From positions 419,263 to 483,262 of the IMG/VR virus record IMGVR_UViG_3300027996_002186: DNA of 64,000 nucleotides; one strand, given 5' to 3'. A program made the position numbers and the translations under genes. The stretch's first letter is position 1; each line of letters starts with the position of its first letter. The notes under the pieces were generated by a model. That model saw nothing but the letters and a program-made list of their open reading frames with translations, searched no databases and was not told where the DNA came from. Of the stretch, positions 1 to 55,918 are shown piece after piece.

Positions 1-852
1 GAATGTGAAATTATCACCATCAATTTTAGTAATTGATTTACTACCAACTTGAACATCATCCCACTTATCCTCATCTGTTTTTTCTTCATCTGAAAGTTTA
101 TTCCATTCCTCTTCTTTGAAATCCTTTCTTTTATAAATAACAACATCATCTTCTTTATACTCAACTGGTTTTCCAGTTTTTTCAAATTTAACCCAGTCTT
201 CTCTTTGTTTCTCTCCAAGTGTTTTAGCTTCTATTTGTTTAGCTGCGGCTAGTTTCTTAGATTCTGGATCCTCTGATTTTTCTAAAGATGATATTTCAGC
301 ATTCAATAAATCCAATGTGAATTGATCCTTTTTAATATTAATTATTATTTGTAATTGTGGGTTCTTAGAACCACCACCCTGTTTTACTAATACAGCATCC
401 ATCTCTTTAATAGCCATACCTTTCATTTGTACAATTATCTTTTTTAAGATATCTTGCTTTTGTTTTAATATCTTAGGATCTACAGCTGGTTTCTTTTCGG
501 CCTCTCCTGGTTTTTTATCAGTAGTTTCCTCTGCTCCTTCTTCTGCTACTGCTCCTTCTTCTCCTTCTTCTGCTACTGCTTCTTCTGCTTCGAATACTTT
601 AGACTCTTTGACAGAAACTTTACCTAATTCTAAGTTTAAACCAGTTTGTTTAACAATAGCATCATTTATCAACTTCAGATATTTTTTATAAATAACCTCA
701 ATCTCATTACCACCCTGCGTCTTTCTTATATTTTCTCCAGCTTTTTTAAACATTTTTCCGAAGAATTTACCAATAGCACCAAGAAATTCTTCATTGACTG
801 GTTTATTATTATTATTATTCTTGAAAGATTCAAAGGTTCTTACATATTTCAT
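1..852 (-). CDS. Hypothetical virion-internal protein, runs off the left edge of the window (not in ORF track)
   Basis: Manual translation from CAT at 850-852: MKYVRTFESFKNNNNKPVNEEFLGAIGKFFG..., open to position 1; TAATATATA motif at 878-886(-). Confidence 0.75.
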   Translation of the reverse strand, partial: MKYVRTFESFKNNNNNKPVNEEFLGAIGKFFGKMFKKAGENIRKTQGGNEIEVIYKKYLKLINDAIVKQTGLNLELGKVSVKESKVFEAEEAVAEEGEEGAVAEEGAEETTDKKPGEAEKKPAVDPKILKQKQDILKKIIVQMKGMAIKEMDAVLVKQGGGSKNPQLQIIINIKKDQFTLDLLNAEISSLEKSEDPESKKLAAAKQIEAKTLGEKQREDWVKFEKTGKPVEYKEDDVVIYKRKDFKEEEWNKLSDEEKTDEDKWDDVQVGSKSITKIDGDNFTF

Positions 853-940
853 AATTTTATAATATTTTTATATAATCTATATATTAGTTTTCTAAACTAT
901 AATTTAATTTAAACATATAAACAAAAAGTATTATATAATT

Positions 941-1411
941 ATGGAAAAGATAGATTCTTTAAATCAAGTGGCTGAATTCCACAAAACTTTCAAAGCTCCC
1001 ATTTTAGATACCCCACAAATACCAGGTGAGGATAGATGTGAACTACGTGTAAACCTTCTACAAGAAGAATTAGATGAGTTATCACAAGCAATAAAAGAAA
1101 ACGACCTTGTTGAGGTAGCTGATGCTCTTTGTGACTTACAATATGTATTGTCTGGTGCAGTTCTTGAATTTGGTTTAGGTGATAAATTTGTTGAGTTATT
1201 CGATGAGGTACAAAGAAGTAATATGTCAAAGGCATGTGATACAATGAAAGAAGCTTTGGCTACATTATCACACTACAAAAAGAAAGATGGTACAGAGGGT
1301 AATTATAAAGAAGTAAATGGTAAATATGTTGTTTACAGAAACTCTGATAATAAAGTATTGAAGTCAATTAACTACTCACCTACTAGTTTAAAAAACATAA
1401 TAGAAGGATGA
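941..1411 (+). CDS. MazG/PRA-PH-like nucleoside triphosphate pyrophosphohydrolase
   Basis: LLQEELDEL...EVADALCDLQYV...EVQRSNMSK motifs. Confidence 0.85.
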   Translation: MEKIDSLNQVAEFHKTFKAPILDTPQIPGEDRCELRVNLLQEELDELSQAIKENDLVEVADALCDLQYVLSGAVLEFGLGDKFVELFDEVQRSNMSKACDTMKEALATLSHYKKKDGTEGNYKEVNGKYVVYRNSDNKVLKSINYSPTSLKNIIEG

Positions 1412-2409
1412 AAACAATTTTAGTCACTGGTGGTGCTGGGTATATTGGATCACACACAATTTTAGAATTATTGAAAGAAGGAAGTGAAGAATGTGAAGTT
1501 TTAATACTTGATGACTTTTCTAATTCAAACCCTTTGATTATTAATAAACTTAATAAGATGGTTAATAATGTAAAAGTGTATGCTAGAGATTGTAGAGATA
1601 CAATAGATGATATATTAACTAATCATAAGATTGATGGTGTTATACATTTTGCAGCATCTAAAGCAGTTGGTGAATCGGTTAATAACCCATTAGAATATTA
1701 TGATAATAACATTAATTCTTTATTAAATATTTTGGATGCTTGTAAAAGATTTGATATTAGAAGTTTAGTATTTTCATCTTCTTGTTCTCTTTATGGTGAT
1801 GTTGATAAATTACCAGTAAATGAAGATACTGAGTTATCTGATCCACAATCACCATACGCTTATACTAAGTTGGTTGGTGAGAGAATAATATCAGATTTTT
1901 GTAATTCAAATTCGAATATTAGTGTTGTATCACTTAGATACTTTAATCCTGTTGGTGCTCACGAAAGTGGAGAGATAGGAGAATATCCAATAACAAAACC
2001 AAATAATATACTTCCGGTTATATGTAACTCTGCTGATACAGGAGAAGAAATGGTGGTGTTTGGTGATACTTATGATACTCGTGATGGTTCTTGTATAAGG
2101 GATTATGTTCATGTCTCAGATATAGCTAGAGCTCATGTTGACTCTCTTAATTATATGTCATCAAATGTTGGTATTTGTGATGTTATTAATTTAGGATCAG
2201 GTGATGGTGTTTCTGTTTTAGAGTTGATTAAAACATTTGAAGAGGTAAATGGTGTTAATATAAACTATAAAATAAGTGATGCGAGAGAAGGTGATATAGT
2301 TCAAATATACTCTGATTCATCAAAAGCTAAAAAACTTTTGGGATGGGAAACTAAATATGATATTAAAGATATGGTATCATCTGCTTGGAAATGGCATAAA
2401 AACTTGTAA
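1408..2409 (+). CDS. galE: UDP-glucose 4-epimerase
   Basis: TGGAGYIGSH, FAASKAVGES, YxxxK (YAYTK), LRYFNPVGAH, RDYVHV. Confidence 0.95.
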   Translation: MKTILVTGGAGYIGSHTILELLKEGSEECEVLILDDFSNSNPLIINKLNKMVNNVKVYARDCRDTIDDILTNHKIDGVIHFAASKAVGESVNNPLEYYDNNINSLLNILDACKRFDIRSLVFSSSCSLYGDVDKLPVNEDTELSDPQSPYAYTKLVGERIISDFCNSNSNISVVSLRYFNPVGAHESGEIGEYPITKPNNILPVICNSADTGEEMVVFGDTYDTRDGSCIRDYVHVSDIARAHVDSLNYMSSNVGICDVINLGSGDGVSVLELIKTFEEVNGVNINYKISDAREGDIVQIYSDSSKAKKLLGWETKYDIKDMVSSAWKWHKNL

Positions 2410-2433
2410 TAACTAATAATTTTAATTACCTTT

Positions 2434-6780: not shown

Positions 6781-6782
6781 AT

Positions 6783-8736: not shown

Positions 8737-9015
8737 TCACATTTGGTCAAGATTATCATCGGTATATTCACCCGGATAGTCGTCTTCGTCCTCACCAAGT
8801 ATAGTATTGATTACTTCTCTAGTATATTTATCTGTCAGAAATGAGACAAAATTATCTAAGGTTGTATGACAAGATGAGTGTACATCATTTTCTTTATGAA
8901 AATCATCTAAGTCTGTGAAAAAATCTAAGGTTTTCCATGGTCCTTCTTCCTCTTCTTGCATCTCTAAAATTCGATTGACTTTAGTATTTTCATTAAACCT
9001 ATTTATATGTTTCAT
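8737..9015 (-). CDS. Acidic hypothetical protein with N-terminal capsid-targeting-like motif
   Basis: Starts MKHINRFNE. Confidence 0.65.
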   Translation of the reverse strand: MKHINRFNENTKVNRILEMQEEEEGPWKTLDFFTDLDDFHKENDVHSSCHTTLDNFVSFLTDKYTREVINTILGEDEDDYPGEYTDDNLDQM

Positions 9016-13364: not shown

Positions 13365-13793
13365 ATGAAACACATTAAAAAGTTTAATGAAGAATTAGTA
13401 CCAAGATTTCCCACTCATAATAAGGGGGAGGTTATTGTTTATGCTAAGGATTTAGATTATAGAAATGTTCAAGTATTTGCTAAGAAGCTTGGTTATGAAG
13501 TAGTTGGTGAGGTTAGAGATGATGGTTATTTAGTGAAGACACCAGTTGGTCAAGAAGAACAAGCCGGTGCTGATTTTGTTGATAACTATCCAGAATTTTT
13601 CTATAACCACGAAAGAGAAGATATCAAAGATACTATGGCTTATGAAGAGTTAGATGATATCAAAAATGATGTTGAAAATTTAAGAGATTCTCTTGGTAGT
13701 CTAAATAAGTTTGGAAAAAGTATGTTACCTGATGGTTGGAATGAGGACATCGACAAAATTATTAATAGATTACAAAATGCCAAACACGAATAA
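13365..13793 (+). CDS. Hypothetical protein with N-terminal capsid-targeting-like motif
   Basis: Starts MKHIKKFNEE. Confidence 0.7.
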   Translation: MKHIKKFNEELVPRFPTHNKGEVIVYAKDLDYRNVQVFAKKLGYEVVGEVRDDGYLVKTPVGQEEQAGADFVDNYPEFFYNHEREDIKDTMAYEELDDIKNDVENLRDSLGSLNKFGKSMLPDGWNEDIDKIINRLQNAKHE

Positions 13794-14145
13794 ATACATA
13801 AAATCATTTATATTGTTTGAATCTGATAACATAAATTCGGATGAAATACCTTGGGAGGTCTTTTGGGAATTTATACAAGATTCTCAAGACGTTTTTATGG
13901 AAATAATGGATGATGATTTATTATTAAGTGATTATGGTAAATACTCTTTTGATTATCAAGATGATTTTATTTTCTTAAAGTTTAAAAAGCCAACAGATTT
14001 AGAAACAATTTCTTTTTTATGGGAAGATATTAAAATAGCAATTAATAGATTGAGTGATAAATATAATATTACTCATAAAGTATCCGATTTACCTGGTATA
14101 ATTAAGTTAGTTGTTACGTTGGAGAATCAATCCATTAAACCATAA
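13777..14145 (+). CDS. Paralogous-domain family protein (start revised from 13711)
   Basis: MPNTNKYIKSFILFES; DSQDVFMEIMDD...AINRL. Confidence 0.6.
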   Translation: MPNTNKYIKSFILFESDNINSDEIPWEVFWEFIQDSQDVFMEIMDDDLLLSDYGKYSFDYQDDFIFLKFKKPTDLETISFLWEDIKIAINRLSDKYNITHKVSDLPGIIKLVVTLENQSIKP

Positions 14146-15539: not shown

Positions 15540-15923
15540 TTAATTTGGTATGAATTGAAGGCTTATTGATTGTAGGATCCATTCTGGGAATTCTTCAATC
15601 CTCTTGATATTTATAAATCTAGCACTGCCATTAGATAATACAATGTGTATATTTTTAATCTTACAATCCTCTGATATTATAATATCGTTAATTCGTTTAA
15701 GATATTCATTGACATCATTCAAACTAAATAAATACTTATCTGGATAAACTCCTATTTGGTTGGTTGATTTATCAATATCTATTGTTATTCTTTCTAATGA
15801 ATCGGATCTCTTTGTAACACTAGTTTTGAAATTTATATCATCTAATTCAAGTAATACATCTCTTATATTATTCATCAGAGAATCTTCGTCATTAAATGAC
15901 TCAAACATCTTTAGATAATTCAT
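15540..15923 (-). CDS. Paralogous-domain family protein
   Basis: MNYLKMFESF; NIRDVLLELDDINF...EYLKRI. Confidence 0.7.
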   Translation of the reverse strand: MNYLKMFESFNDEDSLMNNIRDVLLELDDINFKTSVTKRSDSLERITIDIDKSTNQIGVYPDKYLFSLNDVNEYLKRINDIIISEDCKIKNIHIVLSNGSARFINIKRIEEFPEWILQSISLQFIPN

Positions 15924-16186
15924 TATAATGGTTTATAATTTGGGATAGCTCCTTTGTAATTCTTATTACCACTCTTTAGTTGTTCTCTTTCTGCTTCAGA
16001 TGCAGCTCCATATTCTGGATCTTTCTTTTCTTTATCTTTACAATCCATACAGATTATATCTTCATTGAACATACTCATTGTGGTCATATTATTAGTTGAT
16101 TCACCACATCTATCACAATTATCTCTTCTCATGTCGAAGGAACCATGTCGTGCTGAATAATCTTCAAATGTTTTTAAGTTTTTCAT
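15923..16186 (-). CDS. Zn-finger protein with N-terminal capsid-targeting-like motif
   Basis: MKNLKTFE; CDRC...MSMFNEDIICMDC. Confidence 0.7.
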   Translation of the reverse strand: MKNLKTFEDYSARHGSFDMRRDNCDRCGESTNNMTTMSMFNEDIICMDCKDKEKKDPEYGAASEAEREQLKSGNKNYKGAIPNYKPL

Positions 16187-16542
16187 TCACCTAATTTAGT
16201 TTTTAATTCTTCTATGAATGGTTGAAAATTATGTTTACCATAATCATCTTTAAGTACTGTTGCAACAGCATCTGCGAAATCTTTATATGACATACTATCA
16301 TCAATTTGATTGATTGATTTACTTATATCACTTGATAATAAATCTGATTCATTTGATTCATTGAATCTTTTAAATTTTTTAATTTCATTCACATCATCAC
16401 TGACTGTTAATTTTTTAACAACCTTTAAGAGAAAATCTACATCTTCTATAGCAGCACTTGGATTATCATAGTAATAATCATCACCCCTTTCTTGTAAATG
16501 GGTAAATATATATTCTCTTTCCCAATCAGTTAGTTTATCCAT
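16183..16542 (-). CDS. Hypothetical protein with an internal copy of the targeting motif
   Basis: Internal IKKFKRFNESNES. Confidence 0.6.
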   Translation of the reverse strand: MDKLTDWEREYIFTHLQERGDDYYYDNPSAAIEDVDFLLKVVKKLTVSDDVNEIKKFKRFNESNESDLLSSDISKSINQIDDSMSYKDFADAVATVLKDDYGKHNFQPFIEELKTKLGE

Positions 16543-17089
16543 TATCTAAAACCTTTATTTTTAATGAATCTAACCATTGTTTAGCATCTTCTTCTGAATC
16601 AAAATATATCTCACCACCATCTACTGGATGGTTTTGAAATTCATAATGATATCCTTCTGTTCCAAAGGATTCTTTTGGTAAAGATATGTAGTGTGTTGGT
16701 TCACTAACTTCTGGTTCAATTTCTTTAATTATAGCCATCAATAATTGATAAACATCATCACCAGCATCTACATATTCGAAATCACTATCTCTTGAACTTT
16801 TAGAATATGATTCACCGTTTGGTAAGTCATAAGTAATAACTAGTTTATCATTATGTGGGTGGAAGGTATAATCAGTTCTAATAGAACTACCATCATCCAA
16901 CTCTATTTCATAATCCATCTCGGTCTCACCCGACACACCACTTATTTCAGTTACCTTTTTACCAGTGGCTCTTTCGACCTCACCAACAGTACCTTCAGTA
17001 TAATCAAGATAGTTTTCTTTATCATATTCACTATGTGGAACAACACCACTATAATCTATTGTTTCGTTGAATTTTTTTAAATGTTTCAT
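16535..17089 (-). CDS. Acidic hypothetical protein with N-terminal capsid-targeting-like motif
   Basis: Starts MKHLKKFNE. Confidence 0.7.
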   Translation of the reverse strand: MKHLKKFNETIDYSGVVPHSEYDKENYLDYTEGTVGEVERATGKKVTEISGVSGETEMDYEIELDDGSSIRTDYTFHPHNDKLVITYDLPNGESYSKSSRDSDFEYVDAGDDVYQLLMAIIKEIEPEVSEPTHYISLPKESFGTEGYHYEFQNHPVDGGEIYFDSEEDAKQWLDSLKIKVLDNG

Positions 17090-17607: not shown

Positions 17608-17618
17608 AAGATTATATA

Positions 17619-17930
17619 TTAATAATTAAATCTGTCAATTTCACCAATCACATATCCATTCTTTTTAATCCATTCCTTAGATTTATCTAAATTATCACCA
17701 ACACCAAAATCTATCCCCAATTTTGGATCTTTTAGATTTATATCATCTGAATATACTTCAAATATCAATTTCTTTAATCCACTAAAATATATAACCAATT
17801 CAAAATCTTTAGATTTTCTAAAAAAGCCACGATTAATTGTTCCACTTACGAACAACTTGTTTAACATTTTCCATTTTCTTTTTTTACCACAAATTCTACA
17901 AATTTTATTATAGGACTTGTCGTGACTCAT
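17619..17930 (-). CDS. Hypothetical protein
   Basis: ORF track; start uncertain. Confidence 0.5.
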   Translation of the reverse strand: MSHDKSYNKICRICGKKRKWKMLNKLFVSGTINRGFFRKSKDFELVIYFSGLKKLIFEVYSDDINLKDPKLGIDFGVGDNLDKSKEWIKKNGYVIGEIDRFNY

Positions 17931-36714: not shown

Positions 36715-36803
36715 TTAAACAAATATAGTGAAAAAAATCGAATGATAAAAGATTTTGATAAAATCATTTTAATATATAAAGATATCAAATAAATAATAAA
36801 ATT

Positions 36804-38483
36804 ATGAAGTGGATAAAGGACCGAAATAAATTCTTAAAAGAAGCTAAACTTCGAGACGTTTTGTACCCTAGTCAATCAAAGGAAGTCGCTAGTTCTTGGA
36901 GTGAGAGATATCTTGATTATGAAGAAGTAGCTGCAACTGATAAAATAAAACAAGGTAAGTGGAAATTAGAAGAAGAAGATAAGTTAAAAGTACTTGGAGA
37001 GTTCTTCGATTGTAATATGAGTAATATATTTGAGTTATTTGAAAATTTACCAGATAAATTTAATGAGATTATTTCACAATCAATTGATTTTGATTTAATC
37101 AATAATCGAGATAAAGAAAAGTATAGTGTTATATTTAAGGAATTTGATATTAAAAAGCCTACGATAGACCAAATTGTTTTACTATTTGACAATGTTTTCA
37201 GAAAACTTTCTGTAAATGAAACAAACTCTTCTGAGATGATTCAGAAGGATGAGAATGGTAGACCAATGAGAGATGATAGTGGTAATATGATTAAAATACA
37301 GAAAGAACCGGGATCTCCTATATTCTCAACTAACTTAGTTAATATTAATTCATTTATATCTGATTATAATAGATGTTTTAGAAGTGATGAAGTACAAACA
37401 GATACATTTAATCAAAATGATATTCAAAATTTGAAAAGTTATGCTTCAGATCATTGTAATGATTACCAGGCTGATTTTGAGATATTTAATAGAGATATGT
37501 ACCTTTCTATATCACATAACCCAAAAGACATATTAAATATGTCAATATCTAAGTTTTATTCATCTTGTCAACATTTATACAATGGTGGATATAGAAGCCA
37601 GTTATTAGCTAATGTATTTGATCCTAATAGTATGCCAGCTTATTTAATATTTGATACTCCTTTATTTTGGAATGATAAAAAGATATCTGAATTTTTACCA
37701 TTGACAAGAATGATAATTAGAAATATCGAAACTTATGATGAGAGTGATGGTAAAGAGCCTCAAATATATTTTGATAGAGCTTATCCAGATAGGATGAAAG
37801 ATATCTTTGATGAAATTATAACAAAATATAGTGAGAATAAAAAAAGTGAGAATAATCCTAGGGACTATTACTATACACCAGATATTGATATCGAGACTGA
37901 TAAAGATATAAAAGAACCTTATATGGATAGAATTCGATTAAAACAGAGGCCTTATATAGGTATTAACACCAAAACACTTCACTTAAACAGAAATTATGAT
38001 TGGAGTAAAGTTAAAATAGCTCCAAATGCTAAGATTAAAGAATTGATAATTGAGACTGATGATATTCCAGAAAATATGTTAGATATTGATATTAAATTGG
38101 AGTGGGTAAAGTTCAAATATTTGAAAATTAATACATTGAAAAATTTCTCACATATTAAAACAAATGCTATTGCCTTTGATAAATGTAAATTTGATAACAA
38201 GGTATTAGAAGATATAAGTAAGATAAACAAAAATATAGATAAATTACAAATTGTTAGTTGTGATGCTAATAATTTGAATATTTCTGTTTTCGAAAATCTC
38301 GAAGAGTTACATATGATTTATACATTAGACTCATTAGAAGAATTAAAATCAACATTATCAAATTTAAAAAACATTAAAAAACTTGTTATATCAGGTGATT
38401 TATTAAGTGATAAAGAATCTAAAGCATTTGTTAATTCATTGAAATCTAGAATGAGAGTTGAAATAGTAGGACCAGTAATATGA
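36804..38483 (+). CDS. Protein with targeting-like N-terminus, SC(M/Q)-type domain and LRR-like C-terminus
   Basis: MKWIKDRNKFLKEA; SSCQ...RMII...FDRAYP...PYMD; IKELII/LEELHM/IKKLVI repeats. Confidence 0.65.
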   Translation: MKWIKDRNKFLKEAKLRDVLYPSQSKEVASSWSERYLDYEEVAATDKIKQGKWKLEEEDKLKVLGEFFDCNMSNIFELFENLPDKFNEIISQSIDFDLINNRDKEKYSVIFKEFDIKKPTIDQIVLLFDNVFRKLSVNETNSSEMIQKDENGRPMRDDSGNMIKIQKEPGSPIFSTNLVNINSFISDYNRCFRSDEVQTDTFNQNDIQNLKSYASDHCNDYQADFEIFNRDMYLSISHNPKDILNMSISKFYSSCQHLYNGGYRSQLLANVFDPNSMPAYLIFDTPLFWNDKKISEFLPLTRMIIRNIETYDESDGKEPQIYFDRAYPDRMKDIFDEIITKYSENKKSENNPRDYYYTPDIDIETDKDIKEPYMDRIRLKQRPYIGINTKTLHLNRNYDWSKVKIAPNAKIKELIIETDDIPENMLDIDIKLEWVKFKYLKINTLKNFSHIKTNAIAFDKCKFDNKVLEDISKINKNIDKLQIVSCDANNLNISVFENLEELHMIYTLDSLEELKSTLSNLKNIKKLVISGDLLSDKESKAFVNSLKSRMRVEIVGPVI

Positions 38484-40147
38484 GATATTTAAAACACATA
38501 AAAATATTTGAAGCTTTTAAATCTGATAAGTTATCTAAAACACTTGGATATATCGATTCGAAAAGAGACAAAGATGTCTTTTTAGATAAAATAAAAAGAA
38601 TATGTAATATAATTGATTTCCCTTATTCTGAATTATCAGATGAGTATTTTGAATATTTACCATTCAACTCAGCGCTCAAAAAGGCTGATACGATAAAAGA
38701 TGAACCTTGTGTAGCTACAAGTTCTGAAGAGTTCCCAGAATATGCTATTGCTGGAGAAGTTTGTAAGGAAGGTAAAATTAGAAGAAGATGGGGTAGTCGA
38801 ATTAGAGCTGTCTCTTGTCCTGTGTGTAATGGTACTGGTGTTAAGCCTAAACGAGGCGAGCCTAAGTTAGTTAAATTTTGGTTTAATAAAGATGGTAAAT
38901 ATATAGAAACTACTTGTGTGGATGGTATCATTAGAAATTATGGTGGTAGTTCTTCGGGGTCTGATATTCCATTACCACAAACATCATCTTCATATACGGT
39001 ATCTGGTGAAAAAATTTATCGATCAGGAGGAGCCCGAACTTTACAAACCGGACAATATATACATATAAAGATAAATGGTGAAGAGATGTATGCTTATATT
39101 CTTTCAGAAAGAAGAGATGTATATGCTATACAACCAAAGATGAATGGTGGTATTCCTAATAATACAAGTTCTAGGGTATGGAAAAAAATATCAAGTTATT
39201 CTTGGGATATTGGTGATGGTGATTTTGAATGGTTAATACCAGTTAGTCTTAATAATATGGATAATGATGATGCAGAACCAGAAGCTGATCCATATACTTG
39301 GAACACAGGACTCACTTTTAATTATAGGGGTATAAATTCGAATGGTAGGAATATTGAGCGTTTTATTAAAGATTCTCACTTTGCTATTGTTATGGATTTT
39401 GGGAAATTGAAAAAGTCTGAATTTCAAACTAGAACACACACCAAACATGGAAGAGAGGATAATAAAGTTGGAGCTTTATCTTTTATGAGTGATGATGAAA
39501 TTAAAAAAGAAAATATAGAAAGATATATTAAAAAATTAGCTTCTAGATTAGAAGTTGATGGTAAAGATGTAACTAACCTACCAAAGGTTATAAAAAGATT
39601 ATTAGGATATAGAAATTTAGTATATTTTTTAAGACAAGGACATACAGATCGTTATATATCTACAATTCTAAAAGGTTATATACTTTTATTAAAGAGTCCT
39701 GATGATCGTAAAGAAAGATATTTGAAAGAATTGAATGATAATATTAAATATTCTTTTAAGCAAAGCGTCGATAATAATAAGGATTTAACTAACATTCTAA
39801 AAGAGGTTAAGGATAGGTTAAAAAGAGAGGATAAGGAAGAATATATTGAAGTATTAGATCTTTTAAGTGAATTAAGTTTAGTCATTTATGATAAAATAAA
39901 TAGTTTTGAGCTTGAAACAATTGAAGATTTAGAAATTTTATATCAAAAGATAATGAGTATGAAGAATATTGTTAGATCTGATAGATATTCACTATCTAAA
40001 TTATCATATCATATGGATTACTCATTCAGACGTAGTTCTGATTATTCATATAGATACTTAACTGATAGATATTATATAGAACCTTCGAAGATGCCTAACT
40101 TAATAGAAGATATAAAAACAGCAATGCGAATAATTAAAAAAATGTAA
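38480..40147 (+). CDS. Protein with targeting-like N-terminus and DnaJ-type Zn-finger motif
   Basis: MRYLKHIKIFEA; CKEG...CPVCNGTG. Confidence 0.65.
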   Translation: MRYLKHIKIFEAFKSDKLSKTLGYIDSKRDKDVFLDKIKRICNIIDFPYSELSDEYFEYLPFNSALKKADTIKDEPCVATSSEEFPEYAIAGEVCKEGKIRRRWGSRIRAVSCPVCNGTGVKPKRGEPKLVKFWFNKDGKYIETTCVDGIIRNYGGSSSGSDIPLPQTSSSYTVSGEKIYRSGGARTLQTGQYIHIKINGEEMYAYILSERRDVYAIQPKMNGGIPNNTSSRVWKKISSYSWDIGDGDFEWLIPVSLNNMDNDDAEPEADPYTWNTGLTFNYRGINSNGRNIERFIKDSHFAIVMDFGKLKKSEFQTRTHTKHGREDNKVGALSFMSDDEIKKENIERYIKKLASRLEVDGKDVTNLPKVIKRLLGYRNLVYFLRQGHTDRYISTILKGYILLLKSPDDRKERYLKELNDNIKYSFKQSVDNNKDLTNILKEVKDRLKREDKEEYIEVLDLLSELSLVIYDKINSFELETIEDLEILYQKIMSMKNIVRSDRYSLSKLSYHMDYSFRRSSDYSYRYLTDRYYIEPSKMPNLIEDIKTAMRIIKKM

Positions 40148-42884: not shown

Positions 42885-43436
42885 ATGAAATTTTTAAAAA
42901 AATATAAATTTTTTGAATTAAAAACAAGTACATATTTATCAGCTGCTGATAAGCTAGAAGGATTACATCCAACAAGAGCTAAGAATATTAGGAAATATGT
43001 AGATGATCAACAAAGAGTTGATGTTGATTATCTTGACCCAAGACCATTTCATATAAATAATGATATCTATTATATCACCGGTATTACCAAAGATGAATAT
43101 GGGGTTGGATCATTACCAGAAGGTGAGTTAGTATTTAGAATCGATGTTGAGTTTAAATCATCAACCACAAGTGACGAAAGAATTGAGATGATTATATTTA
43201 ACAATGAGAAATTTATCAAGGATGATATAGAATTAGATGGATCACCAATCAATAGGGTAAACCTTAAATTTAAAAGACTAATAGGTACTGAACATGAACA
43301 AGAACAAGAAAGAACATTATCCAGAAGATTCTTTTTTGAAACTAGAAAAGAAGCAAGAGCCTTTCTTTCTATTATAGAAAGTGAATTGGGTATTAAAATG
43401 CTTATTAAAATAAATCAAATATATAAAACTAACTAA
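42885..43436 (+). CDS. Hypothetical protein with N-terminal capsid-targeting-like motif
   Basis: MKFLKKYKFFE; TAATATATA at 42872-42880. Confidence 0.7.
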   Translation: MKFLKKYKFFELKTSTYLSAADKLEGLHPTRAKNIRKYVDDQQRVDVDYLDPRPFHINNDIYYITGITKDEYGVGSLPEGELVFRIDVEFKSSTTSDERIEMIIFNNEKFIKDDIELDGSPINRVNLKFKRLIGTEHEQEQERTLSRRFFFETRKEARAFLSIIESELGIKMLIKINQIYKTN

Positions 43437-45061: not shown

Positions 45062-45272
45062 TGGTATTAGATTACACAAAATAGGAGCCGAGAAGACTAG
45101 AGTATTTGAGGTTAACTTTGATGAAGTTTATGACCATTATAAACAAAAAGCAGAAGATGCTGGTTATTTTGGAGATCTTAAATTCATTAAAGAGAGGGGC
45201 AAAATAATAGTTTATTCTGTGATAGAGTTACCACCTGATGATGATGAATTAATCATCCGAGTTTCCTCTTAA
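45054..45272 (+). CDS. Hypothetical protein
   Basis: Coupled ORF. Confidence 0.55.
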   Translation: MSDGIRLHKIGAEKTRVFEVNFDEVYDHYKQKAEDAGYFGDLKFIKERGKIIVYSVIELPPDDDELIIRVSS

Positions 45273-45731
45273 ACGCTTAGTCATTTCCTCATAAGAGATT
45301 GGTATTCTCCAATAAAGTGATACATGAGAACATTCTTTATTTGAGTACCTTTCTAAATCATCTATTTTTATGAATTGACTATCATCATCTTTACGTTTAC
45401 CACCACCCACATGAACTTTAATAGCAAATATTGGTTGTATTATATATGAATATGTCTTTAAGAATTCATTTGATCTGTATATAACATCGAAAACATCACC
45501 AAATCTAAATGTTGGTACGGAAAAATCTTGTACGTGATCCTCATTAAAAATACCGTGTATTTCAACTCTTAAGCTATCACCAATAACTTCACCCCTTCTT
45601 TCAGAAGTTACAGTAGCCTCTAGATTTTGATCACGAGCATCGCATAATATATCATTAAGGTCATCAATTATAATTGACTCTTCCTCTTTGGTTATATCCT
45701 CAAATATTTTATATTTAATCAGGTACTTCAT
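45249..45731 (-). CDS. Paralogous-domain family protein
   Basis: MKYLIKYKIFED; DLNDILCDARDQNL...VIYRSNEFLK. Confidence 0.7.
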   Translation of the reverse strand: MKYLIKYKIFEDITKEEESIIIDDLNDILCDARDQNLEATVTSERRGEVIGDSLRVEIHGIFNEDHVQDFSVPTFRFGDVFDVIYRSNEFLKTYSYIIQPIFAIKVHVGGGKRKDDDSQFIKIDDLERYSNKECSHVSLYWRIPISYEEMTKRLRGNSDD

Positions 45732-46797
45732 TTATAAATTTCATACTTATTTCTTTTACGACTGGTCTAACATCAGTCTCTAAATCTGATTCCGATATAG
45801 ATATTTCAAAATCATCAAACTGCATTTCAGATTTAAATTTATATTCACCATCTTTCTTACCAACATATGAAAATTCTTCTTTCCACTCATTCATACCATT
45901 ATCAAGTACTTGAAATTCTATTGGGATTGATCCATTTGGATCAAAAGATGGGTTTCTTGCTTCTTCTCTCGATTTGTGTGAAGTGTTATTGTTTATTCCG
46001 TTAGGAAAATGTTTATCTAAAAAATCTAATAAACCCTTTATATTGAAATCATCTAAGCTTTTTAATTTCTCTGGATGAGGTGGGTAACTAAATGTCCCTC
46101 TTTTGTTATGTTGGCTAAACCTAATTGTAATGTTTTCAACATCATATTTAATTATATCCTTTATTTGGTTGATTCTATAATCGACATCATCTAATAGAAT
46201 AGTATTTTGTCCTCTTTTATAAAGAAGTACACCTATACCATATTTTGTAAATCCATTGGATGGCATACTTCTTTCCCTACTTGGGGTGACCATATAACCA
46301 TATCCCAAATCTTCCATATCATACAACATACTCTCAACATCACCACCGACATCATTATTATCTATATTTGTAATAGACTCATTTAGACTACAATCAGTTA
46401 CGTTTATATCAATATACCAAACTTCTGTCCCAATATAATCCAAAATATCTGAACTACTTAATTGGTACCATTCATTACCACTTAGATGTATCTCATATGT
46501 GCAAAAATTACAACCCTTTGACTTAACATATTGTGAAACTCTATATAAAGAATCAGATAGTTCTTTTGTTATTTCAAATTTCCCAGACATACTACCATCC
46601 TTGGTTGGTGTTATCTGAAAAAATATTCTATCAACCCCACGATTCGATCGTGTAATTTTCTTATTTATGAAAAGACCTAAATCCTCCACTTCTAATAAAA
46701 TATCTTTGATATCATCAAATAAATCCAAGAGGATTGCTTGAGGAAATTGAGGATATTTTGATTTCTCAAATAATTTATATGTTTCTAAATATTTCAT
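45715..46797 (-). CDS. Paralogous-domain family protein, two domain copies
   Basis: MKYLETYKLFE; DIKDILLEVEDLGL; SLNES linker; DVESMLYDMEDLGY. Confidence 0.7.
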   Translation of the reverse strand: MKYLETYKLFEKSKYPQFPQAILLDLFDDIKDILLEVEDLGLFINKKITRSNRGVDRIFFQITPTKDGSMSGKFEITKELSDSLYRVSQYVKSKGCNFCTYEIHLSGNEWYQLSSSDILDYIGTEVWYIDINVTDCSLNESITNIDNNDVGGDVESMLYDMEDLGYGYMVTPSRERSMPSNGFTKYGIGVLLYKRGQNTILLDDVDYRINQIKDIIKYDVENITIRFSQHNKRGTFSYPPHPEKLKSLDDFNIKGLLDFLDKHFPNGINNNTSHKSREEARNPSFDPNGSIPIEFQVLDNGMNEWKEEFSYVGKKDGEYKFKSEMQFDDFEISISESDLETDVRPVVKEISMKFINEVPD

Positions 46798-47774
46798 ATC
46801 TTAAATCTTAATCTAATATTGAAGCTGTGATAATGGCAATTCATTAACTCATCTATTGATTTCATATCTGCCCATTTATTTTGAAAGGATGCCGTTGCGA
46901 CCGAGATGAATAACTCATAACCAAGAGTTGTCATATAAGCATCTAGTCTTCTAACTACTTCACCGAACCATTCTGGTAAATCAAGTGATCCACTTCTATC
47001 AACCTCATCCCTCATATTAATTGTATCTATATTAATATAGAATGGTATGAAATAACCCTCTTTAATCTCATAATCAACATCATTATCAATAAACTCAATA
47101 CAAATATCATCAAGATCTCTTCTTAACTCAGATTTCTCGGTGTTCCGGAAGTTTTGATTTAAGTGGGTGTCCGAAAACAAATGTTGCTTCCGTTCGGTAA
47201 ATCTTACCAGACCAAACTGAGGTGATTCTACTTTACTCTCTGTGTAATATCCCGATGAAATTCTAATCGGAGGCCTTGTTTTTTTTGTTTTTATATCTAT
47301 TTGTGATATCTTAAAATAACCACTATCGAATTCAGAAATATTCTCTAGTTTTTCTAGATTTATATCTAAATCACACACACCCATTTCTGTATAATCAACG
47401 TTAAAAGCGGAGTTTTGATAAAATGCTCCAAACCTTAAATCACTATCTAAATATTCATCAAGTCTCATAATAATATCTATCAATTCTTCTGTTATTTTTA
47501 TATCACCAGAGTCACTCCCAGCACCAGAAGAAATATCATACTTATCATATATCTCAATCATCATATCATTATAAATACCTGATTTAGAATGCATTGAAGT
47601 TTGTTGATTGTAATCAACAAACAAATGACCTGTTAAAGATTCACCATCCATTGTTGATGATATTATACGATATTGTAGCCCTAAATCAATAAGATCCAAA
47701 CAGATATCATTGATATTATCCATTTCATCTGCACTTATCCCAACACTTTCATTAAAACTTTTTAAGTATTTCAT
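46794..47774 (-). CDS. Paralogous-domain family protein, two domain copies
   Basis: MKYLKSFNES; NINDICLDLIDLGL; YTES linker; DLDDICIEFIDND...RRLDAYMTTLG. Confidence 0.7.
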   Translation of the reverse strand: MKYLKSFNESVGISADEMDNINDICLDLIDLGLQYRIISSTMDGESLTGHLFVDYNQQTSMHSKSGIYNDMMIEIYDKYDISSGAGSDSGDIKITEELIDIIMRLDEYLDSDLRFGAFYQNSAFNVDYTEMGVCDLDINLEKLENISEFDSGYFKISQIDIKTKKTRPPIRISSGYYTESKVESPQFGLVRFTERKQHLFSDTHLNQNFRNTEKSELRRDLDDICIEFIDNDVDYEIKEGYFIPFYINIDTINMRDEVDRSGSLDLPEWFGEVVRRLDAYMTTLGYELFISVATASFQNKWADMKSIDELMNCHYHSFNIRLRFKI

Positions 47775-47811
47775 ATATAAATCTATATATTAATATGGTA
47801 AACCCATTACA

Positions 47812-54251: not shown

Positions 54252-54274
54252 AAATAAAAAAAAACAATGAAAAA

Positions 54275-54832
54275 ATGAAAAAACTATTATTAATTTTAGG
54301 AATTATAGCACTATTTGTGAGTAATTCTTATTCGCAAATAACAACCAACCCTGACACTGTATGTGTTGGTGCAGTTGGTGAAAACTATTGGGTGACCAAT
54401 ACACCAGGATCAACCTATGATTGGACATTGAATGGTGGGGGTGGTTCAATTACATCTGGACAAGGAACTGACGCAATCACAGTTGATTGGGGTAATGTTC
54501 CAGGGTTATACCCAACAGCGGTAACTGTGGTAGAAACAAACGCTGCAGGATGTACTGATACGGTTGATTTGGATATCTTTATTTTACTACCAGCATTTAT
54601 ACAAATAGGACCTTTCTGTGAGGGTGACCCTTGTGTAACATTGACAGGAACTCCAGCTGGAGGTGCTTGGAGTGGAACAGGTGTTACATTAACGGCAGGT
54701 GTTTACGAATTTTGTCCTGTAACGTCAGGTAATGGTGTATTTAACTTAACTTACACAGTTGGTGGGTGTTCAATCGTGATGGTCGTAACTGTAAATGCTG
54801 CACCCGTATTGGGACCAATTATACATAATTAA
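54275..54832 (+). CDS. Secreted PKD/Ig-like protein
   Basis: Signal peptide ending SYS|Q; YDW...GG.I.SGQGT..ITV.W; ends LGPIIHN. Confidence 0.8.
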   Translation: MKKLLLILGIIALFVSNSYSQITTNPDTVCVGAVGENYWVTNTPGSTYDWTLNGGGGSITSGQGTDAITVDWGNVPGLYPTAVTVVETNAAGCTDTVDLDIFILLPAFIQIGPFCEGDPCVTLTGTPAGGAWSGTGVTLTAGVYEFCPVTSGNGVFNLTYTVGGCSIVMVVTVNAAPVLGPIIHN

Positions 54833-55425
54833 TGAAATATTTACTATCCATATTACTTTTAATACCTCTTTGGTTGTCTGCGCAAAATGTGCAGACAATT
54901 AAAGTGTGTACCGAAGACCAGTCATATATACAAGATTATTGGGTGGATAACCCCACGACAAGTAGTGTATATGAGTGGGTTGTGGAGGGTGGATCTATTG
55001 TTAATGGGCAAGGTACTGATTTTATTACAGTAAATTGGTTAAATATACCTTATGATATATACCAAATATCAGTTTCGGTTATTAGTAACATGTGTATTGG
55101 TGATACTTCATATTTATTAGTAGATATTGATGAATGTTCTTTTGATGGTGTTTACGTACCTAATTGCTTTACTATTAATGGTGATGGTATGAATGATACA
55201 TGGGGACCAGTATTTAATGGTGAGTGGGATGATTCACAATATATTATGTACATTTTTAATCGATGGGGTGAAATGATATGGGAATCACATAATCCACTAG
55301 AAACTTGGAATGGGTATTATCAAAATAAGTTATGTCAAAACGGAGTTTATGTTTGGAAGATGTACTACAAACCACTTAATAGTTATCAATTACAAACTCA
55401 CGGACACGTCACGCTATTAAAGTAA
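54832..55425 (+). CDS. Secreted PKD-like protein with T9SS type-B (gliding-motility-associated) C-terminal domain
   Basis: Signal peptide ending LSA|Q; YVPNCFTINGDGMND.W...IFNRWGE...WNG.Y...GVY.W...GHVTLLK. Confidence 0.9.
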   Translation: MKYLLSILLLIPLWLSAQNVQTIKVCTEDQSYIQDYWVDNPTTSSVYEWVVEGGSIVNGQGTDFITVNWLNIPYDIYQISVSVISNMCIGDTSYLLVDIDECSFDGVYVPNCFTINGDGMNDTWGPVFNGEWDDSQYIMYIFNRWGEMIWESHNPLETWNGYYQNKLCQNGVYVWKMYYKPLNSYQLQTHGHVTLLK

Positions 55426-55432
55426 TTCAACA

Positions 55433-55918
55433 TCAGATATCCAAGGGAATAAAATAGATGTATAATTTTTTTACTCTATCTGGTAAATCATCAAAGTTTT
55501 CGAAATAACAATTATTACCAAATCTATCTGTATTATTCAAAGCGGGTGTTGTTATGAAATAGCAATCCAATCTATGAGTATCAGATACCATATCTATTGA
55601 TGTTATTATTGTTTCTTTTATATCTGATAAATTAAATCCCCTCTCACTTCTTCTAAGGTCAAACGGTTCATGTCTTGGACTTCCGGGCTTAATTTCGATT
55701 ACTATTTGTATCAAATTAACAGCATGTTCACTAATAAAGTATTCCTGAATATCATCAGAGTGTATCATTTTCTTACCTTTGAATGATATTGGTATATCAG
55801 TAACATTATTAATATCTACATGATAACCATCATCTTCTAAATCAAGAAACCTATCTGAAATATCTTCTATTAAACTTTCTTGTACTTTATATAATTTATA
55901 TGATTTTAAATAATCCAC
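55433..55918 (-). CDS. Paralogous-domain family protein (GTG start proposed)
   Basis: (M)DYLKSYKLYKVQES; DISDRFLDLEDDGY; TAATATATA at 55923-55931(-). Confidence 0.6.
   Translation of the reverse strand: MDYLKSYKLYKVQESLIEDISDRFLDLEDDGYHVDINNVTDIPISFKGKKMIHSDDIQEYFISEHAVNLIQIVIEIKPGSPRHEPFDLRRSERGFNLSDIKETIITSIDMVSDTHRLDCYFITTPALNNTDRFGNNCYFENFDDLPDRVKKLYIYFIPLDI

What the first reader, a model, noticed from the sequence alone, without database searches (positions are those of the whole stretch)
1..55918. About 17 unrelated ORFs share a T4 capsid-targeting-like N-terminus: a possible packaged effector library
Seen: MKYVRTFES (852-), MKHINRFNE (9015-), MKHIKKFNE (13365), NKYIKSFILFES (13777), MNYLKMFES (15923-), MKNLKTFE (16186-), MKHLKKFNE (17089-), MKYLKKYKQHKES (20082-), MRYIKSYKIFES (20497-), MKWLRNYELFKES (20553), MKWIKDRNKFLKEA (36804), MRYLKHIKIFEA (38480), MKFLKKYKFFE (42885), MKYLIKYKIFED (45731-), MKYLETYKLFE (46797-), MKYLKSFNES (47774-), DYLKSYKLYKVQES (55918-). 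The downstream domains differ (Zn fingers, LRR-like, acidic domains). Known: T4 internal proteins use a 10-aa capsid-targeting sequence (IPIII MKTYQEFIAE) that the prohead protease gp21 removes after Glu. Inference: this phage loads far more proteins into its head than T4's few IPs and injects them on infection, perhaps for anti-defence or host takeover.
Basis: partly seen in the sequence, partly recalled or inferred. Interest (0 to 1): 0.85.

Follow-up and report, generated by a model that had tools for sequence, protein, structure and literature searches.

The report
Shared N-terminal address tag, marine megaphage
About one gene in six in this piece of a giant marine phage genome encodes a protein that starts with the same short peptide tag. 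The tag behaves like a portable address label, most plausibly one that loads the proteins into the virus head for injection into the next host cell, but no experiment has tested this.

Summary
All 17 N-termini are at the stated coordinates. A profile scan of all 927 candidate start codons in the window recovers 15 of them and nothing else; the other two fall outside the three-class profile.

The tag is M-[KR]-[YHW]-[LI]-[KR]-x-[FY]-(0-4 aa)-E-[SNA]. It occurs only at N-termini, is selected as a peptide rather than as DNA, and has three discrete length classes. In the related 634-kb uncultured phage LR745206, at least 115 of 942 ORFs (12%) carry it, against 0 in shuffled controls.

Within homologous families the tag class switches and the linker length varies from 0 to about 90 aa. 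Tagged proteins carry unrelated domains (Ank, LRR, GNAT, M15 peptidase, NUDIX, Zn-ribbon). The tag is therefore a portable module.

The clade has a T4-type head. Its gp21-family protease is fused to a scaffold containing about 14 "YSEY[IL]AE" repeats. Tag genes sit in the transcription units that carry the promoter box found upstream of head and tail genes (odds ratio 6.2, p = 7e-14).

A T4-CTS-like head-loading propeptide is the best reading (about 0.45). It rests on circumstantial evidence only: there are no virion or cleavage data. I found no published description.

The parts
1..852 (-). Tag gene, incomplete (runs off the window start; at least 284 aa). Tag MKYVRTFE|S, class 1.
   Evidence: 23.0 bits. 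LR745206 ortholog starts MKYVRTFESF. Box A at 878-886, 25 nt upstream.
8737..9015 (-). Tag gene, 92 aa, very acidic (pI 4.2). Tag MKHINRFNE|N, class 2.
   Evidence: 17.8 bits. Last gene of the minus-strand run that contains the baseplate wedge gene 9991-11718. Nearest Box A at 9711-9719.
13365..13793 (+). Tag gene, 142 aa. Tag MKHIKKFNE|E, class 2.
   Evidence: 21.8 bits. Ortholog in LR745206 is 80% identical and keeps the tag.
13777..14145 (+). Tag gene, 122 aa. Tag NKYIKSFILFE|S, class 3, preceded by MPNT.
   Evidence: The LR745206 ortholog begins MNKIKSFKLFES.
15540..15923 (-). Tag gene, 127 aa. Tag MNYLKMFE|S, class 1. Member of the shared-domain paralog group.
   Evidence: 15.6 bits.
15923..16186 (-). 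Tag gene, 87 aa. Tag MKNLKTFE|D, class 1, followed by a CxxC...CxxC zinc-ribbon.
   Evidence: phrog_27033, E = 1.5e-20, over residues 21-79 only, so the tag lies outside the domain.
16535..17089 (-). Tag gene, 184 aa, pI 4.4. Tag MKHLKKFNE|T, class 2.
   Evidence: 22.7 bits. Transcription unit headed by Box A at 17613-17621.
19447..20082 (-). Tag gene, 211 aa. Tag MKYLKKYKQHKE|S, class 3-like.
   Evidence: LR745206 ortholog (84% identical) starts MRYIKSYKTFKES.
20084..20497 (-). Tag gene, 137 aa. Tag MRYIKSYKIFE|S, class 3. This family was studied in depth.
   Evidence: 69 metagenomic homologs; tag class switches and linker varies. (AlphaFold2: tag pLDDT about 50, core about 90). Box A lies 25 nt upstream.
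20553..21929 (+). Tag gene, 458 aa. Tag MKWLRNYELFKE|S.
   Evidence: (orthologs only in LR745206 and LR756502).
36804..38483 (+). Tag gene, 559 aa. Tag MKWIKDRNKFLKE|A. The C-terminus looks LRR-like by eye.
   Evidence: Box A lies 25 nt upstream.
38480..40147 (+). Tag gene, 555 aa. Tag MRYLKHIKIFE|A, class 3.
   Evidence: LR745206 ortholog starts MKDLKHIKLFEAF.
42885..43436 (+). Tag gene, 183 aa. Tag MKFLKKYKFFE|L, class 3.
   Evidence: homologous paralogs in LR745206 carry a class 2 tag. Box A lies 4 nt upstream.
45249..45731 (-). Tag gene, 160 aa. Tag MKYLIKYKIFE|D, class 3.
   Evidence: 24.6 bits.
45715..46797 (-). Tag gene, 360 aa. Tag MKYLETYKLFE|K, class 3.
46794..47774 (-). Tag gene, 326 aa. 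Tag MKYLKSFNE|S, class 2. First gene of a three-gene tag operon.
   Evidence: 27.0 bits. The same N-terminal 30 residues and ORF length (326 aa) are found on IMG/VR contigs of 483 kb and 313 kb. Box A lies 9 nt upstream.
55433..55918 (-). Tag gene, 161 aa, GTG start. Tag (M)DYLKSYKLYKVQE|S.
   Evidence: 11.2 bits. Box A lies 4 nt upstream.
20520..20531 (.). Bidirectional Box A (TAATATATA read on both strands) between the divergent tag genes 20497(-) and 20553(+).
   Evidence: The box is 14-fold enriched upstream of genes in LR745206.
17613..17621 (-). Box A heading the unit 17607->15540, which contains three tag genes.
47784..47792 (-). Box A heading the three-gene tag operon 47774->45249.
36770..36778 (+). 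Box A heading the two-gene tag operon 36804->40147.

Best explanation
The window comes from a marine megaphage of the 'Mahaphage' group, sister to the uncultured phages LR745206 and LR756502. This group has a T4-type head.

Seventeen genes encode proteins that begin with an 8-14-residue cationic, aromatic peptide followed by Glu and a small residue. The three forms are MKYLKTFE-S/N, MK[YH]LK[KRS]FNE-S and MK[YH][LI]KxYK[IL]FE-S.

Shown: the peptide is a strictly N-terminal, protein-level, portable module. It is attached to many unrelated, mostly small and acidic proteins. Its genes are co-regulated with virion genes.

Inferred:
- The tag works like the T4 capsid-targeting sequence. It docks the newly made protein onto the scaffolding core, whose scaffold part has a long poly-acidic tract and tandem YSEY[IL]AE repeats.
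- The shell then closes around the core.
- The gp21-family prohead protease, which is fused to the scaffold, degrades the scaffold and cuts the tag off after the Glu.
- The trimmed cargo stays in the head with the DNA and enters the next host at infection.

In the best-sampled relative at least 115 proteins (12% of ORFs) would use this route.
For: 1. The tag is real, N-terminal only and selected as a peptide.
- 12 of 93 N-termini carry the core pattern, against 0.48 in shuffles and 0 of 335 internal Met.
- Strict class patterns occur 34 times at N-termini. The single 'internal' case among 199,054 residues looks like an unrecognised GTG start.
- Codon usage inside the tag equals the genome average, and Ser uses both TCN and AGY codons.

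2. The tag is modular.
- In the m20497 family (37 aligned homologs) the tag switches between classes 2 and 3. The linker to the conserved core varies from 0 to about 30 aa, and three members have a domain of about 90 aa inserted after the tag.
- A second family also switches class.
- AlphaFold2 gives pLDDT of about 50 for residues 1-10 and about 90 for the core.
- Tagged proteins carry M15 peptidase, NUDIX, Ank, LRR, GNAT, methyltransferase, NFACT-R and Zn-ribbon domains.

3. The head machinery is T4-type.
- Terminase, sheath, tube, portal and gp23 have homologs. Pfam gives Portal_T4 at 2.7e-57 and Gp23 at 1.8e-26.
- The 707-aa protein immediately upstream of the capsid gene aligns with T4 gp21 across the ..HP.. 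and ..VSSR.. motifs (BLASTP 2e-4; Pfam S77 0.005). It also hits annotated prohead core proteases in 713 phage records.
- Its C-terminal scaffold part has about 14 tandem repeats containing Y-S-E-Y-[IL]-A-E. These are candidate [IL]-x-E cleavage sites.
- The capsid protein propeptide has a conserved [ILM]-x-E-N.

4. The tag genes are co-regulated with virion genes.
- Box A (TAATATATA) is 14-fold enriched upstream of genes and lies directly upstream of portal, protease-scaffold, capsid, sheath, tube and terminase.
- 70 of 89 tag genes lie in Box A units, against 318 of 853 other genes (odds ratio 6.2, p = 7e-14).
- A host-like box heads 6 of 89 tag-gene units, against 252 of 853 (p = 6e-7).
- All 17 window tag genes are in Box A units.

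5. Genes with tag-like N-termini lie next to head genes in LR745206 and in the 735-kb phage.

6. The tag is lineage-specific rather than compositional. PTm1 and T4 have none, and it is rarer in more distant clade members. At least nine IMG/VR contigs carry both the tag and the protease-scaffold.

7. Precedent: T4 propeptides of 10-20 residues target proteins to the prohead core and are removed by gp21, which cuts C-terminal to Glu (PMC5694885).
Against: - There are no virion proteomics, cleavage data or expression data for any member. My one attempt to lay metatranscriptome contigs failed.
- Only class 3 has [ILV] at P3. Class 2 has Phe at P3. Class 1 has mostly Thr at P3 and a conserved aromatic at P2', which suggests the class 1 motif runs past the Glu.
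- The tag does not closely resemble the clade's own scaffold repeat. The one ORF whose N-terminus does resemble it (MNYEDYIAE, LR745206 460435-460686) is not a tag protein.
- Tag proteins are acidic (69% have pI below 5.5), unlike the basic T4 internal proteins (from my own knowledge).
- At least 115 different cargo proteins would be unprecedented.
- Box A also precedes the uvsX and gp46 homologs, and weaker variants precede replication genes, so 'late' timing is not proven.
- The host-like box is only about 2-fold enriched upstream of genes, so that class is noisy.
- The protease and scaffold were examined in relatives. They are not inside this window.
Confidence: 0.45

Rival explanations
1. 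The tag is an address or docking peptide for a different destination. Candidates are a short cationic amphipathic helix that takes proteins to the cell membrane, to another virion part, to a phage-built compartment, or to a common hub or chaperone. The three classes could specify different partners. The tag is not removed and the proteins are not packaged in the head.
For: - The tag is portable, strictly N-terminal and in three discrete classes.
- Hydrophobic residues at positions 3, 4, 7 and 10 alternate with Lys/Arg at 2, 5, 6 and 8. This fits an amphipathic helix, and AlphaFold2 draws it as a low-confidence helix extension.
- Class 1 keeps a conserved aromatic after the Glu, which a cleavage site does not need.
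- The promoter link shows only co-expression with virion genes, not packaging.
Against: - The Glu is invariant and is followed by a small residue. This has no obvious role in membrane binding.
- The cargo is strongly acidic and would be repelled by anionic membranes.
- No compartment or hub protein was identified.
- The only precedent for such a tag in phages with a gp21-type protease is head targeting (PMC5694885).
Confidence: 0.2
2. The tag is simply the inherited N-terminus of one very large, fast-diverging paralog superfamily that spread by tandem duplication. It is kept because the first few codons or residues favour translation initiation or nascent-chain behaviour in this host. It has no sorting function.
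For: - Six of the 17 window proteins share 40-110 aa beyond the tag.
- 45 of 89 tag genes in LR745206 are adjacent to another tag gene, against 16 expected.
- About 95% of tag proteins have no Pfam domain, so hidden common ancestry cannot be ruled out for many.
- The second codon is nearly always AAA or AAG.
Against: - The tag is fused to clearly unrelated Pfam domains (M15 peptidase, NUDIX, Ank, LRR, GNAT, methyltransferase, NFACT-R).
- The linker length is free, and extra domains are inserted between the tag and the core.
- Conservation runs through residues 7-12, including the invariant Glu. That is further than known start-codon context effects (from my own knowledge).
- Codon usage in the tag is unbiased.
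- PTm1, another AT-rich phage of a marine Bacteroidetes host, has no tags.
Confidence: 0.15
3. The tag is a degradation or processing signal that sets protein lifetime. It would be recognised by a host AAA+ protease or by a phage-encoded peptidase rather than by the prohead protease.
For: - The pattern Met-basic-hydrophobic-hydrophobic loosely recalls N-terminal ClpX recognition motifs (from my own knowledge).
- The window itself encodes an M3 oligopeptidase at 48571-50601 (Pfam 1.2e-105).
- The N-terminal segment is exposed and of low confidence in the model.
Against:
- It does not explain the link to the virion-gene promoter class or the invariant Glu.
- Tagging 12% of the proteome for degradation has no precedent known to me.
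- M3 oligopeptidases act on short free peptides rather than on folded proteins (from my own knowledge).
Confidence: 0.08
4. The tag is a chance or compositional artefact of AT-rich coding sequence.
For: The genome is 29% GC. Lys, Tyr, Leu, Phe and Asn are encoded by AT-rich codons.
Against: - Shuffles give 0.48 core-pattern matches against 12 observed.
- The HMM scan gives 115 N-termini at 10 bits or more, against 0 shuffled.
- There are no true internal occurrences.
- Composition-matched controls have none.
- 102 IMG/VR stretches match the class 2 DNA pattern, almost all exactly at ORF starts.
Confidence: 0.01

Closest known systems
T4 capsid-targeting sequence (CTS) of internal proteins IPI, IPII and IPIII and of Alt (Mullaney & Black 1996, as summarised in PMC5694885)
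   Same: It is a short N-terminal peptide of 10-20 aa that is portable to unrelated proteins. The phage has a gp21-family protease that cuts after Glu, together with a scaffolding core. The peptide starts MK, has aromatic residues around positions 3-7 and ends in Glu followed by a small residue. In class 3 an Ile or Leu lies two residues before the Glu, as in T4's I-A-E.
   Different: - There is no detectable sequence homology to MKTYQEFIAE.
- The tag is cationic.
- Two of the three classes lack Leu or Ile at P3.
- 17 genes in 64 kb and at least 115 per genome carry it, against a handful in T4.
- The cargo is acidic rather than basic.
- Packaging and cleavage have not been shown.
Propeptides of head and ejection proteins in phiKZ-like giant phages (phiKZ, 201phi2-1, SPN3US)
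   Same: Many head-internal proteins are processed by a gp21-related protease after Glu, and paralogs have conserved N-termini (PMC5694885). SPN3US heads carry more than 40 MDa of ejection proteins (abstract of PMC7411985), so a large protein cargo has precedent.
   Different: In those phages the propeptides are mostly over 100 residues long, the cleavage motif is A/S/G-x-E, and only about 8-19 proteins are processed. No single short tag is shared by over a hundred proteins.
The hyper-variable internal-protein locus of T-even phages, where different IP genes share the CTS-coding 5' end (from my own knowledge: Repoila et al. 1994)
   Same: It shows the same idea: a common N-terminal tag in front of diverse, fast-changing cargo, arranged in tandem.
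   Different: That is one small locus per genome. Here tag genes are spread over the whole genome in many clusters, and they did not turn over faster than neighbouring genes.
N-terminal packing signals of cargo in extracellular contractile injection systems (PVC/eCIS) and the N-terminal leader of P22 ejection protein gp7 (both from my own knowledge)
   Same: N-terminal peptides direct cargo into a phage-like particle. The P22 gp7 leader is removed by an M3 oligopeptidase, and this window encodes an M3 oligopeptidase.
   Different: The PVC signals are about 50 disordered residues and load the tail tube lumen. No sequence similarity was tested or is expected.

Membership tests
T4-type capsid-targeting propeptide (CTS) | Short N-terminal peptide of about 10-20 aa at the extreme N-terminus | tested here: met
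   Tags are 8-14 aa long and always at residue 1. The one exception is offset by four residues.
T4-type capsid-targeting propeptide (CTS) | Portable: the same peptide precedes unrelated proteins | tested here: met
   Class switching and variable linkers occur within families. Unrelated Pfam domains follow the tag.
T4-type capsid-targeting propeptide (CTS) | The phage encodes a gp21-family (S77) prohead protease and a scaffolding core | tested here: met
   Tested in relatives, not in the window. The LR745206 protein at 198546-200669 aligns with T4 gp21 (BLASTP 2e-4) with the HP and VSSR motifs conserved. tblastn hits annotated prohead proteases. IMG/VR contigs carry both the protease and the tags.
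T4-type capsid-targeting propeptide (CTS) | Ends at a gp21-type site, [L/I]-x-E followed by the mature protein | tested here: inconclusive
   Glu is invariant and P1' is mostly S, N or A. P3 is I, L or V in class 3 (18 of 22), Phe in class 2 (30 of 38), and variable in class 1. The specificity of this clade's protease is unknown. The scaffold repeats ([IL]-A-E) and the capsid propeptide ([ILM]-x-E-N) suggest hydrophobic-x-E.
T4-type capsid-targeting propeptide (CTS) | Sequence relationship to the T4 CTS MKTYQEFIAE | tested here: not met
   There is only a pattern-level resemblance (MK start, aromatics, terminal Glu). The tag HMMs find nothing in the first 50 kb of T4, but the T4 internal-protein genes themselves were not scanned.
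T4-type capsid-targeting propeptide (CTS) | Made while heads assemble | tested here: inconclusive
   Tag genes share the promoter box of the head and tail genes (odds ratio 6.2, p = 7e-14). There are no timing data, and the box also precedes the uvsX and gp46 homologs.
T4-type capsid-targeting propeptide (CTS) | The protein is present in virions with the peptide removed | not testable with these tools
   The phage is uncultured and no proteome is available.
Sec, Tat or lipoprotein signal peptides | A hydrophobic core of 10 or more residues after a basic N-region | tested here: not met
   The tag has no hydrophobic stretch. None of 89 tag proteins has a TM-like segment. Genuine Bacteroidetes-type signal peptides occur on other window proteins (52926-55425).
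phiKZ-like long propeptides | Propeptide over about 50-100 aa ending in A/S/G-x-E | tested here: not met
   The tags are 8-14 aa long and the P3 residue is hydrophobic or variable.

The most novel reading that the evidence does not exclude
The three tag classes form a virus-encoded protein-sorting code. Over a hundred phage proteins (about 12% of the proteome) would be addressed by interchangeable N-terminal peptides to distinct destinations, of which the head interior may be only one. The others could be a membrane site, a phage-made compartment or another virion part. That would be an organelle-like targeting system in a bacteriophage.
Probability: 0.12. Interest if true: 0.9.

Novelty: new variant of a known kind. 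Interest (0 to 1): 0.75.

Why it matters
Megaphages of 0.6 Mb or more are uncultured, and most of their genes have no known function. A single recognisable tag on about 12% of the ORFs sorts those unknowns into one functional class and gives a direct handle for experiments.

If the tag is a head-loading signal, these phages would inject over a hundred different pre-made proteins with their DNA, far more than any known phage. The cargo includes ankyrin, LRR, acetyltransferase, NUDIX and cell-wall peptidase domains. That would change how we think about the first minutes of infection, about counter-defence, and about why such genomes and capsids are so large. It would also provide a natural short peptide for loading foreign proteins into large capsids.

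If the tag is not a head signal, it is still an undescribed protein-sorting or control element used on a very large scale.

Tried and rejected
- Pfam, PHROGs and NCBIfam on the 17 window tag proteins gave no family, apart from a Zn-ribbon PHROG on one protein.
- The ESM Atlas search with the 17089 protein gave scores of 0.76 or less and no usable lead.
- The Foldseek search of the AlphaFold2 model of the 20497 protein against the PDB gave nothing at E of 0.001 or better.
- tblastn of tag proteins against 50,697 phage records found only the uncultured megaphages, so no cultured relative with a virion proteome exists.
- phmmer of the protease domain against PDB sequences did not find T4 gp21. 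A direct BLASTP against T4 gp21 did align it.
- Stop-codon recoding was tested and rejected; the standard code fits.
- I asked whether tag genes turn over faster than their neighbours, as arms-race cargo might. They do not: 59% against 58% have an LR745206 homolog, and the identity difference is not significant (p = 0.53).
- The metatranscriptome check failed.
- Full-text literature searches for the tag peptide strings returned nothing. Find-searches of the two most relevant megaphage papers found no 'capsid targeting', 'internal protein', 'prohead protease' or 'paralog' in one (its only N-terminal mentions concern rpS21) and no 'N-terminal' or 'protease' in the other.
- An expected nucleotide-level explanation (a conserved DNA cassette or translation signal) was rejected because codon usage in the tag is unbiased.

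Full report
**What the window is.** The sequence is 29% GC, and the standard genetic code gives dense ORFs. Its only DNA relative among 50,697 phage records is LR745206, an uncultured 634,780-bp phage, at 78.6% identity over part of the window. Protein searches add LR756502 (642 kb) and LR756504 (636 kb). These belong to the 'Mahaphage' group, whose largest members are predicted to infect Bacteroidetes (PMC7162821). The window itself is found in many marine metagenomes. A marine megaphage, Mar_Mega_1, has been described as sister to LR745206 and LR756502 (PMC9723777). One window gene, 9991-11718(-), is a baseplate wedge subunit (phrog_219, 3e-26). Other genes include a PAS histidine kinase, an ECF-type sigma factor, an M3 oligopeptidase and a SprB-repeat secreted protein.

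**Checking the observation.** All 17 N-termini are at the stated places. The core pattern is at 12 of 93 automatically called N-termini. Residue shuffles give a mean of 0.48, and the pattern is at 0 of 335 internal Met. I built profile HMMs of the three tag classes from LR745206 and scanned all 927 possible starts in the window. This recovered 15 of the 17 at 11 bits or more and nothing else above 8.2 bits. The two missed are a longer variant (36804) and a tag offset by four residues (13777).

**Anatomy of the tag.** I fetched the whole of LR745206 and called 942 ORFs.
- A strict pattern finds 89 tagged ORFs.
- The HMMs find 115 at 10 bits or more, against 0 of 942 shuffled N-termini and 4 of 2558 internal-Met windows.
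- The tags fall into three discrete classes by the position of an invariant Glu: MKYLKTFE-[SN]-[FY] (E8), MK[YH]LK[KRS]FNE-S (E9) and MK[YH][LI]KxYK[IL]FE-S (E11).
- Strict class patterns occur 34 times at N-termini. They occur once 'internally' in 199,054 residues, and that case appears to be an unrecognised GTG start.
- Codon usage inside the tag equals the genome average, and Ser uses both codon families. Selection therefore acts on the peptide, not on a DNA or RNA element.

**The tag is a module, not part of a fold.**
- The 20497 protein has 69 metagenomic homologs. In an alignment of 37 of them the conserved core begins at '..IKDILLPISDMGY'. The tag in front of it is class 3 in some members and class 2 in others. 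The linker varies from none to about 30 residues, and three members have an extra segment of about 90 residues between tag and core.
- A second family (42885 and its LR745206 paralogs) also switches between classes 2 and 3.
- AlphaFold2 on the first family gives pLDDT of about 90 for the core but about 50 for residues 1-10. The fold has no PDB match.
- About 95% of tag proteins have no Pfam domain. The few that do carry unrelated domains. In LR745206 these are an M15 cell-wall peptidase, NUDIX and DUF6576. Among 81 class 2 tag proteins from IMG/VR they are ankyrin, LRR, GNAT, methyltransferase, NFACT-R and a TnpB-like domain. In the window there is a Zn-ribbon.
- Some paralogy is real. Six of the 17 window proteins share 40-110 aa beyond the tag. 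In LR745206, 45 of 89 tag genes are adjacent to another tag gene, against 16 expected.

**Distribution.** A degenerate DNA pattern for class 2 finds 102 stretches in IMG/VR. Virtually all matches lie exactly at ORF starts, in 23-35% GC contigs of 8-676 kb. At least nine of those contigs also carry the clade's protease-scaffold gene. The tag is rarer in more distant megaphages: 3 of 60 ORFs in one 50-kb sample of LR756504, 1 of 48 and 4 of 48 in two samples of LR756501, and 1 of 90 and 1 of 37 in two samples of LR756500. It is absent from Tenacibaculum phage PTm1 (31% GC, marine Bacteroidetes host; 0 of 57) and from the first 50 kb of T4 (0 of 86). It is thus a lineage trait, not a consequence of base composition or host phylum.

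**Evidence bearing on mechanism: the head machinery.**
- LR745206 has homologs of T4 terminase, sheath, tube, portal and gp23 (Pfam Portal_T4 2.7e-57, Gp23 1.8e-26).
- It also has homologs of the T4 replication and recombination proteins gp39, gp41, gp43, gp44, gp46, gp47, gp61 and UvsX.
- The 707-aa protein just upstream of the capsid gene aligns with T4 gp21 over 107 residues, including the '..HP..' and '..VSSR..' motifs. It matches prohead core proteases in 713 phage records.
- Its C-terminal two-thirds is a scaffold with about 14 tandem 14-residue repeats of the form 'xIxYSEY[IL]AExLDK', plus a long poly-acidic tract. The repeats are conserved across the clade.
It offers many [IL]-A-E sites of the kind T4 gp21 cuts.
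- The capsid protein propeptide carries a conserved [ILM]-x-E-N.
- According to PMC5694885, T4 internal head proteins bind the core through 10-20-residue N-terminal CTS peptides. These are then removed by gp21, which cuts C-terminal to Glu, as the related giant-phage proteases also do.

**Evidence bearing on mechanism: regulation.**
- The 9-mer TAATATATA ('Box A') is 14-fold enriched upstream of LR745206 genes.
- It lies directly upstream of portal, protease-scaffold, capsid, sheath, tube and terminase.
- When each gene is assigned to the nearest upstream box in its co-directional run, 70 of 89 tag genes fall in Box A units against 318 of 853 other genes (odds ratio 6.2, p = 7e-14).
- Only 6 of 89 tag genes fall in units with the Bacteroidetes-type TAnnTTTG box, against 252 of 853 (p = 6e-7).
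- In the window all 17 tag genes lie in Box A units. One of those units also holds the baseplate wedge gene.
- Caveats: Box A also precedes the uvsX and gp46 homologs. The host-like box is only 2-fold enriched, with the expected 19-20-nt TTTG spacing in a subset only.

**Properties of the cargo.** Tag proteins are soluble (no TM-like segments) and acidic. Their median pI is 5.0 against 5.75 for other proteins, and 69% have pI below 5.5 against 45% (p = 4e-7). Orthologs between the window and LR745206 keep their tags. Tag genes are not lost or diverged faster than their neighbours.

**Interpretation.** The tag's position, length, portability and terminal Glu, the T4-type protease-scaffold, and co-regulation with virion genes together make a CTS-like head-loading propeptide the best single explanation. 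I put it at about 0.45.

Shown: the tag exists, is N-terminal, modular and peptide-selected, is lineage-specific, and is linked to the virion-gene promoter class.

Inferred: binding to the scaffold core, cleavage after Glu, retention in the head, injection, and an effector role for the cargo.

Points against: classes 1 and 2 do not fit [L/I]-x-E; class 1 has a conserved aromatic after the Glu; the tag differs from the clade's own scaffold repeat; the cargo is acidic; the number of cargo proteins would be unprecedented; and no experimental data exist.

Rivals are another sorting or docking function (0.2), a diversified paralog superfamily with a translation-favoured N-terminus (0.15), a degradation or processing signal (0.08) and chance (0.01).

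**Novelty.** Full-text searches for the tag peptides returned nothing. Find-searches of the two relevant megaphage papers found no 'capsid targeting', 'internal protein', 'prohead protease' or 'paralog' in one (its only N-terminal mentions concern rpS21) and no 'N-terminal' or 'protease' in the other. No Pfam, PHROG or NCBIfam model covers the tag. I rate it a new variant of a known kind: CTS-like targeting, expanded roughly 30-fold and with a different peptide. There is a smaller chance that it is a new sorting system.

Noticed in passing
window, e.g. 20520-20531, 42872-42880, 55923-55931; LR745206 genome-wide: The promoter-like Box A (TAATATATA) ends at two preferred distances from start codons: 4-5 nt and about 17-30 nt. 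The short class would give leaderless or nearly leaderless mRNAs. The box between 20497(-) and 20553(+) is palindromic and serves both divergent genes.
   Followed up: partly
L010:10435-10686 (LR745206 460435-460686, minus strand): A small ORF consists of four copies of the scaffold repeat. From its second Met it reads MNYEDYIAESLEKNISYSEYISEN.., which closely resembles the T4 CTS MKTYQEFIAE. It lies just upstream, on the same strand, of a six-gene tag cluster at 455.9-459.4 kb, separated from it by a 259-aa untagged gene and a small opposite-strand ORF.
   Followed up: partly
L015:8546-10666 (LR745206 198546-200669); also L017, L018, L019: The prohead protease and the scaffold are fused into one 630-810-aa protein across the clade. 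The scaffold has about 10-14 tandem 14-aa repeats (xIxYSEY[IL]AExLDK) and a poly-Glu/Asp tract. The repeat core resembles the T4 CTS, which hints that the T4 CTS may mimic a scaffold self-association element.
   Followed up: partly
window 48571-50601 (+): A phage-encoded M3 oligopeptidase (Pfam Peptidase_M3, 1.2e-105). Host oligopeptidase A removes the N-terminal leader of P22 ejection protein gp7 (from my own knowledge). A phage copy in a genome full of short N-terminal tags may clear or process such peptides.
   Followed up: no
window 6979-8663 (-), 52225-52824 (+): The window holds a PAS-domain histidine kinase, with what looks by eye like a receiver-domain protein next to it (6979-7410). 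It also holds an ECF-type sigma factor. These are regulatory genes unusual for a phage.
   Followed up: partly
window 52926-55425 (+): Three consecutive proteins have Bacteroidetes-style signal peptides, and one has a SprB repeat. This fits a Bacteroidetes host.
   Followed up: partly
window 60000-64000: Coding density drops to about 0.22 under every stop-codon scheme except TAA recoding. The region holds a tRNA-Gln(TTG) at 61596-61669(-) and only short ORFs.
   Followed up: no
L005:2508-2897 (LR745206 202508-202897): An NFACT-R RNA-binding domain protein (Pfam 1.5e-16) lies immediately downstream of the capsid gene and has a tag-like N-terminus, MIKKYKLFKEG. Among the 81 IMG/VR class 2 tag proteins, one also matches NFACT-R_1.
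   Followed up: no
L017:7989-12254 (LR756501, 735 kb): Four tandem paralogs of 341-361 aa have variant tag-like N-termini (..KFNGYMKKES....HYKNFVNEA....NFNGYVYES....NYNGFLFEA..). They sit on the same strand a few kb upstream of the portal, protease-scaffold and capsid genes.
   Followed up: no
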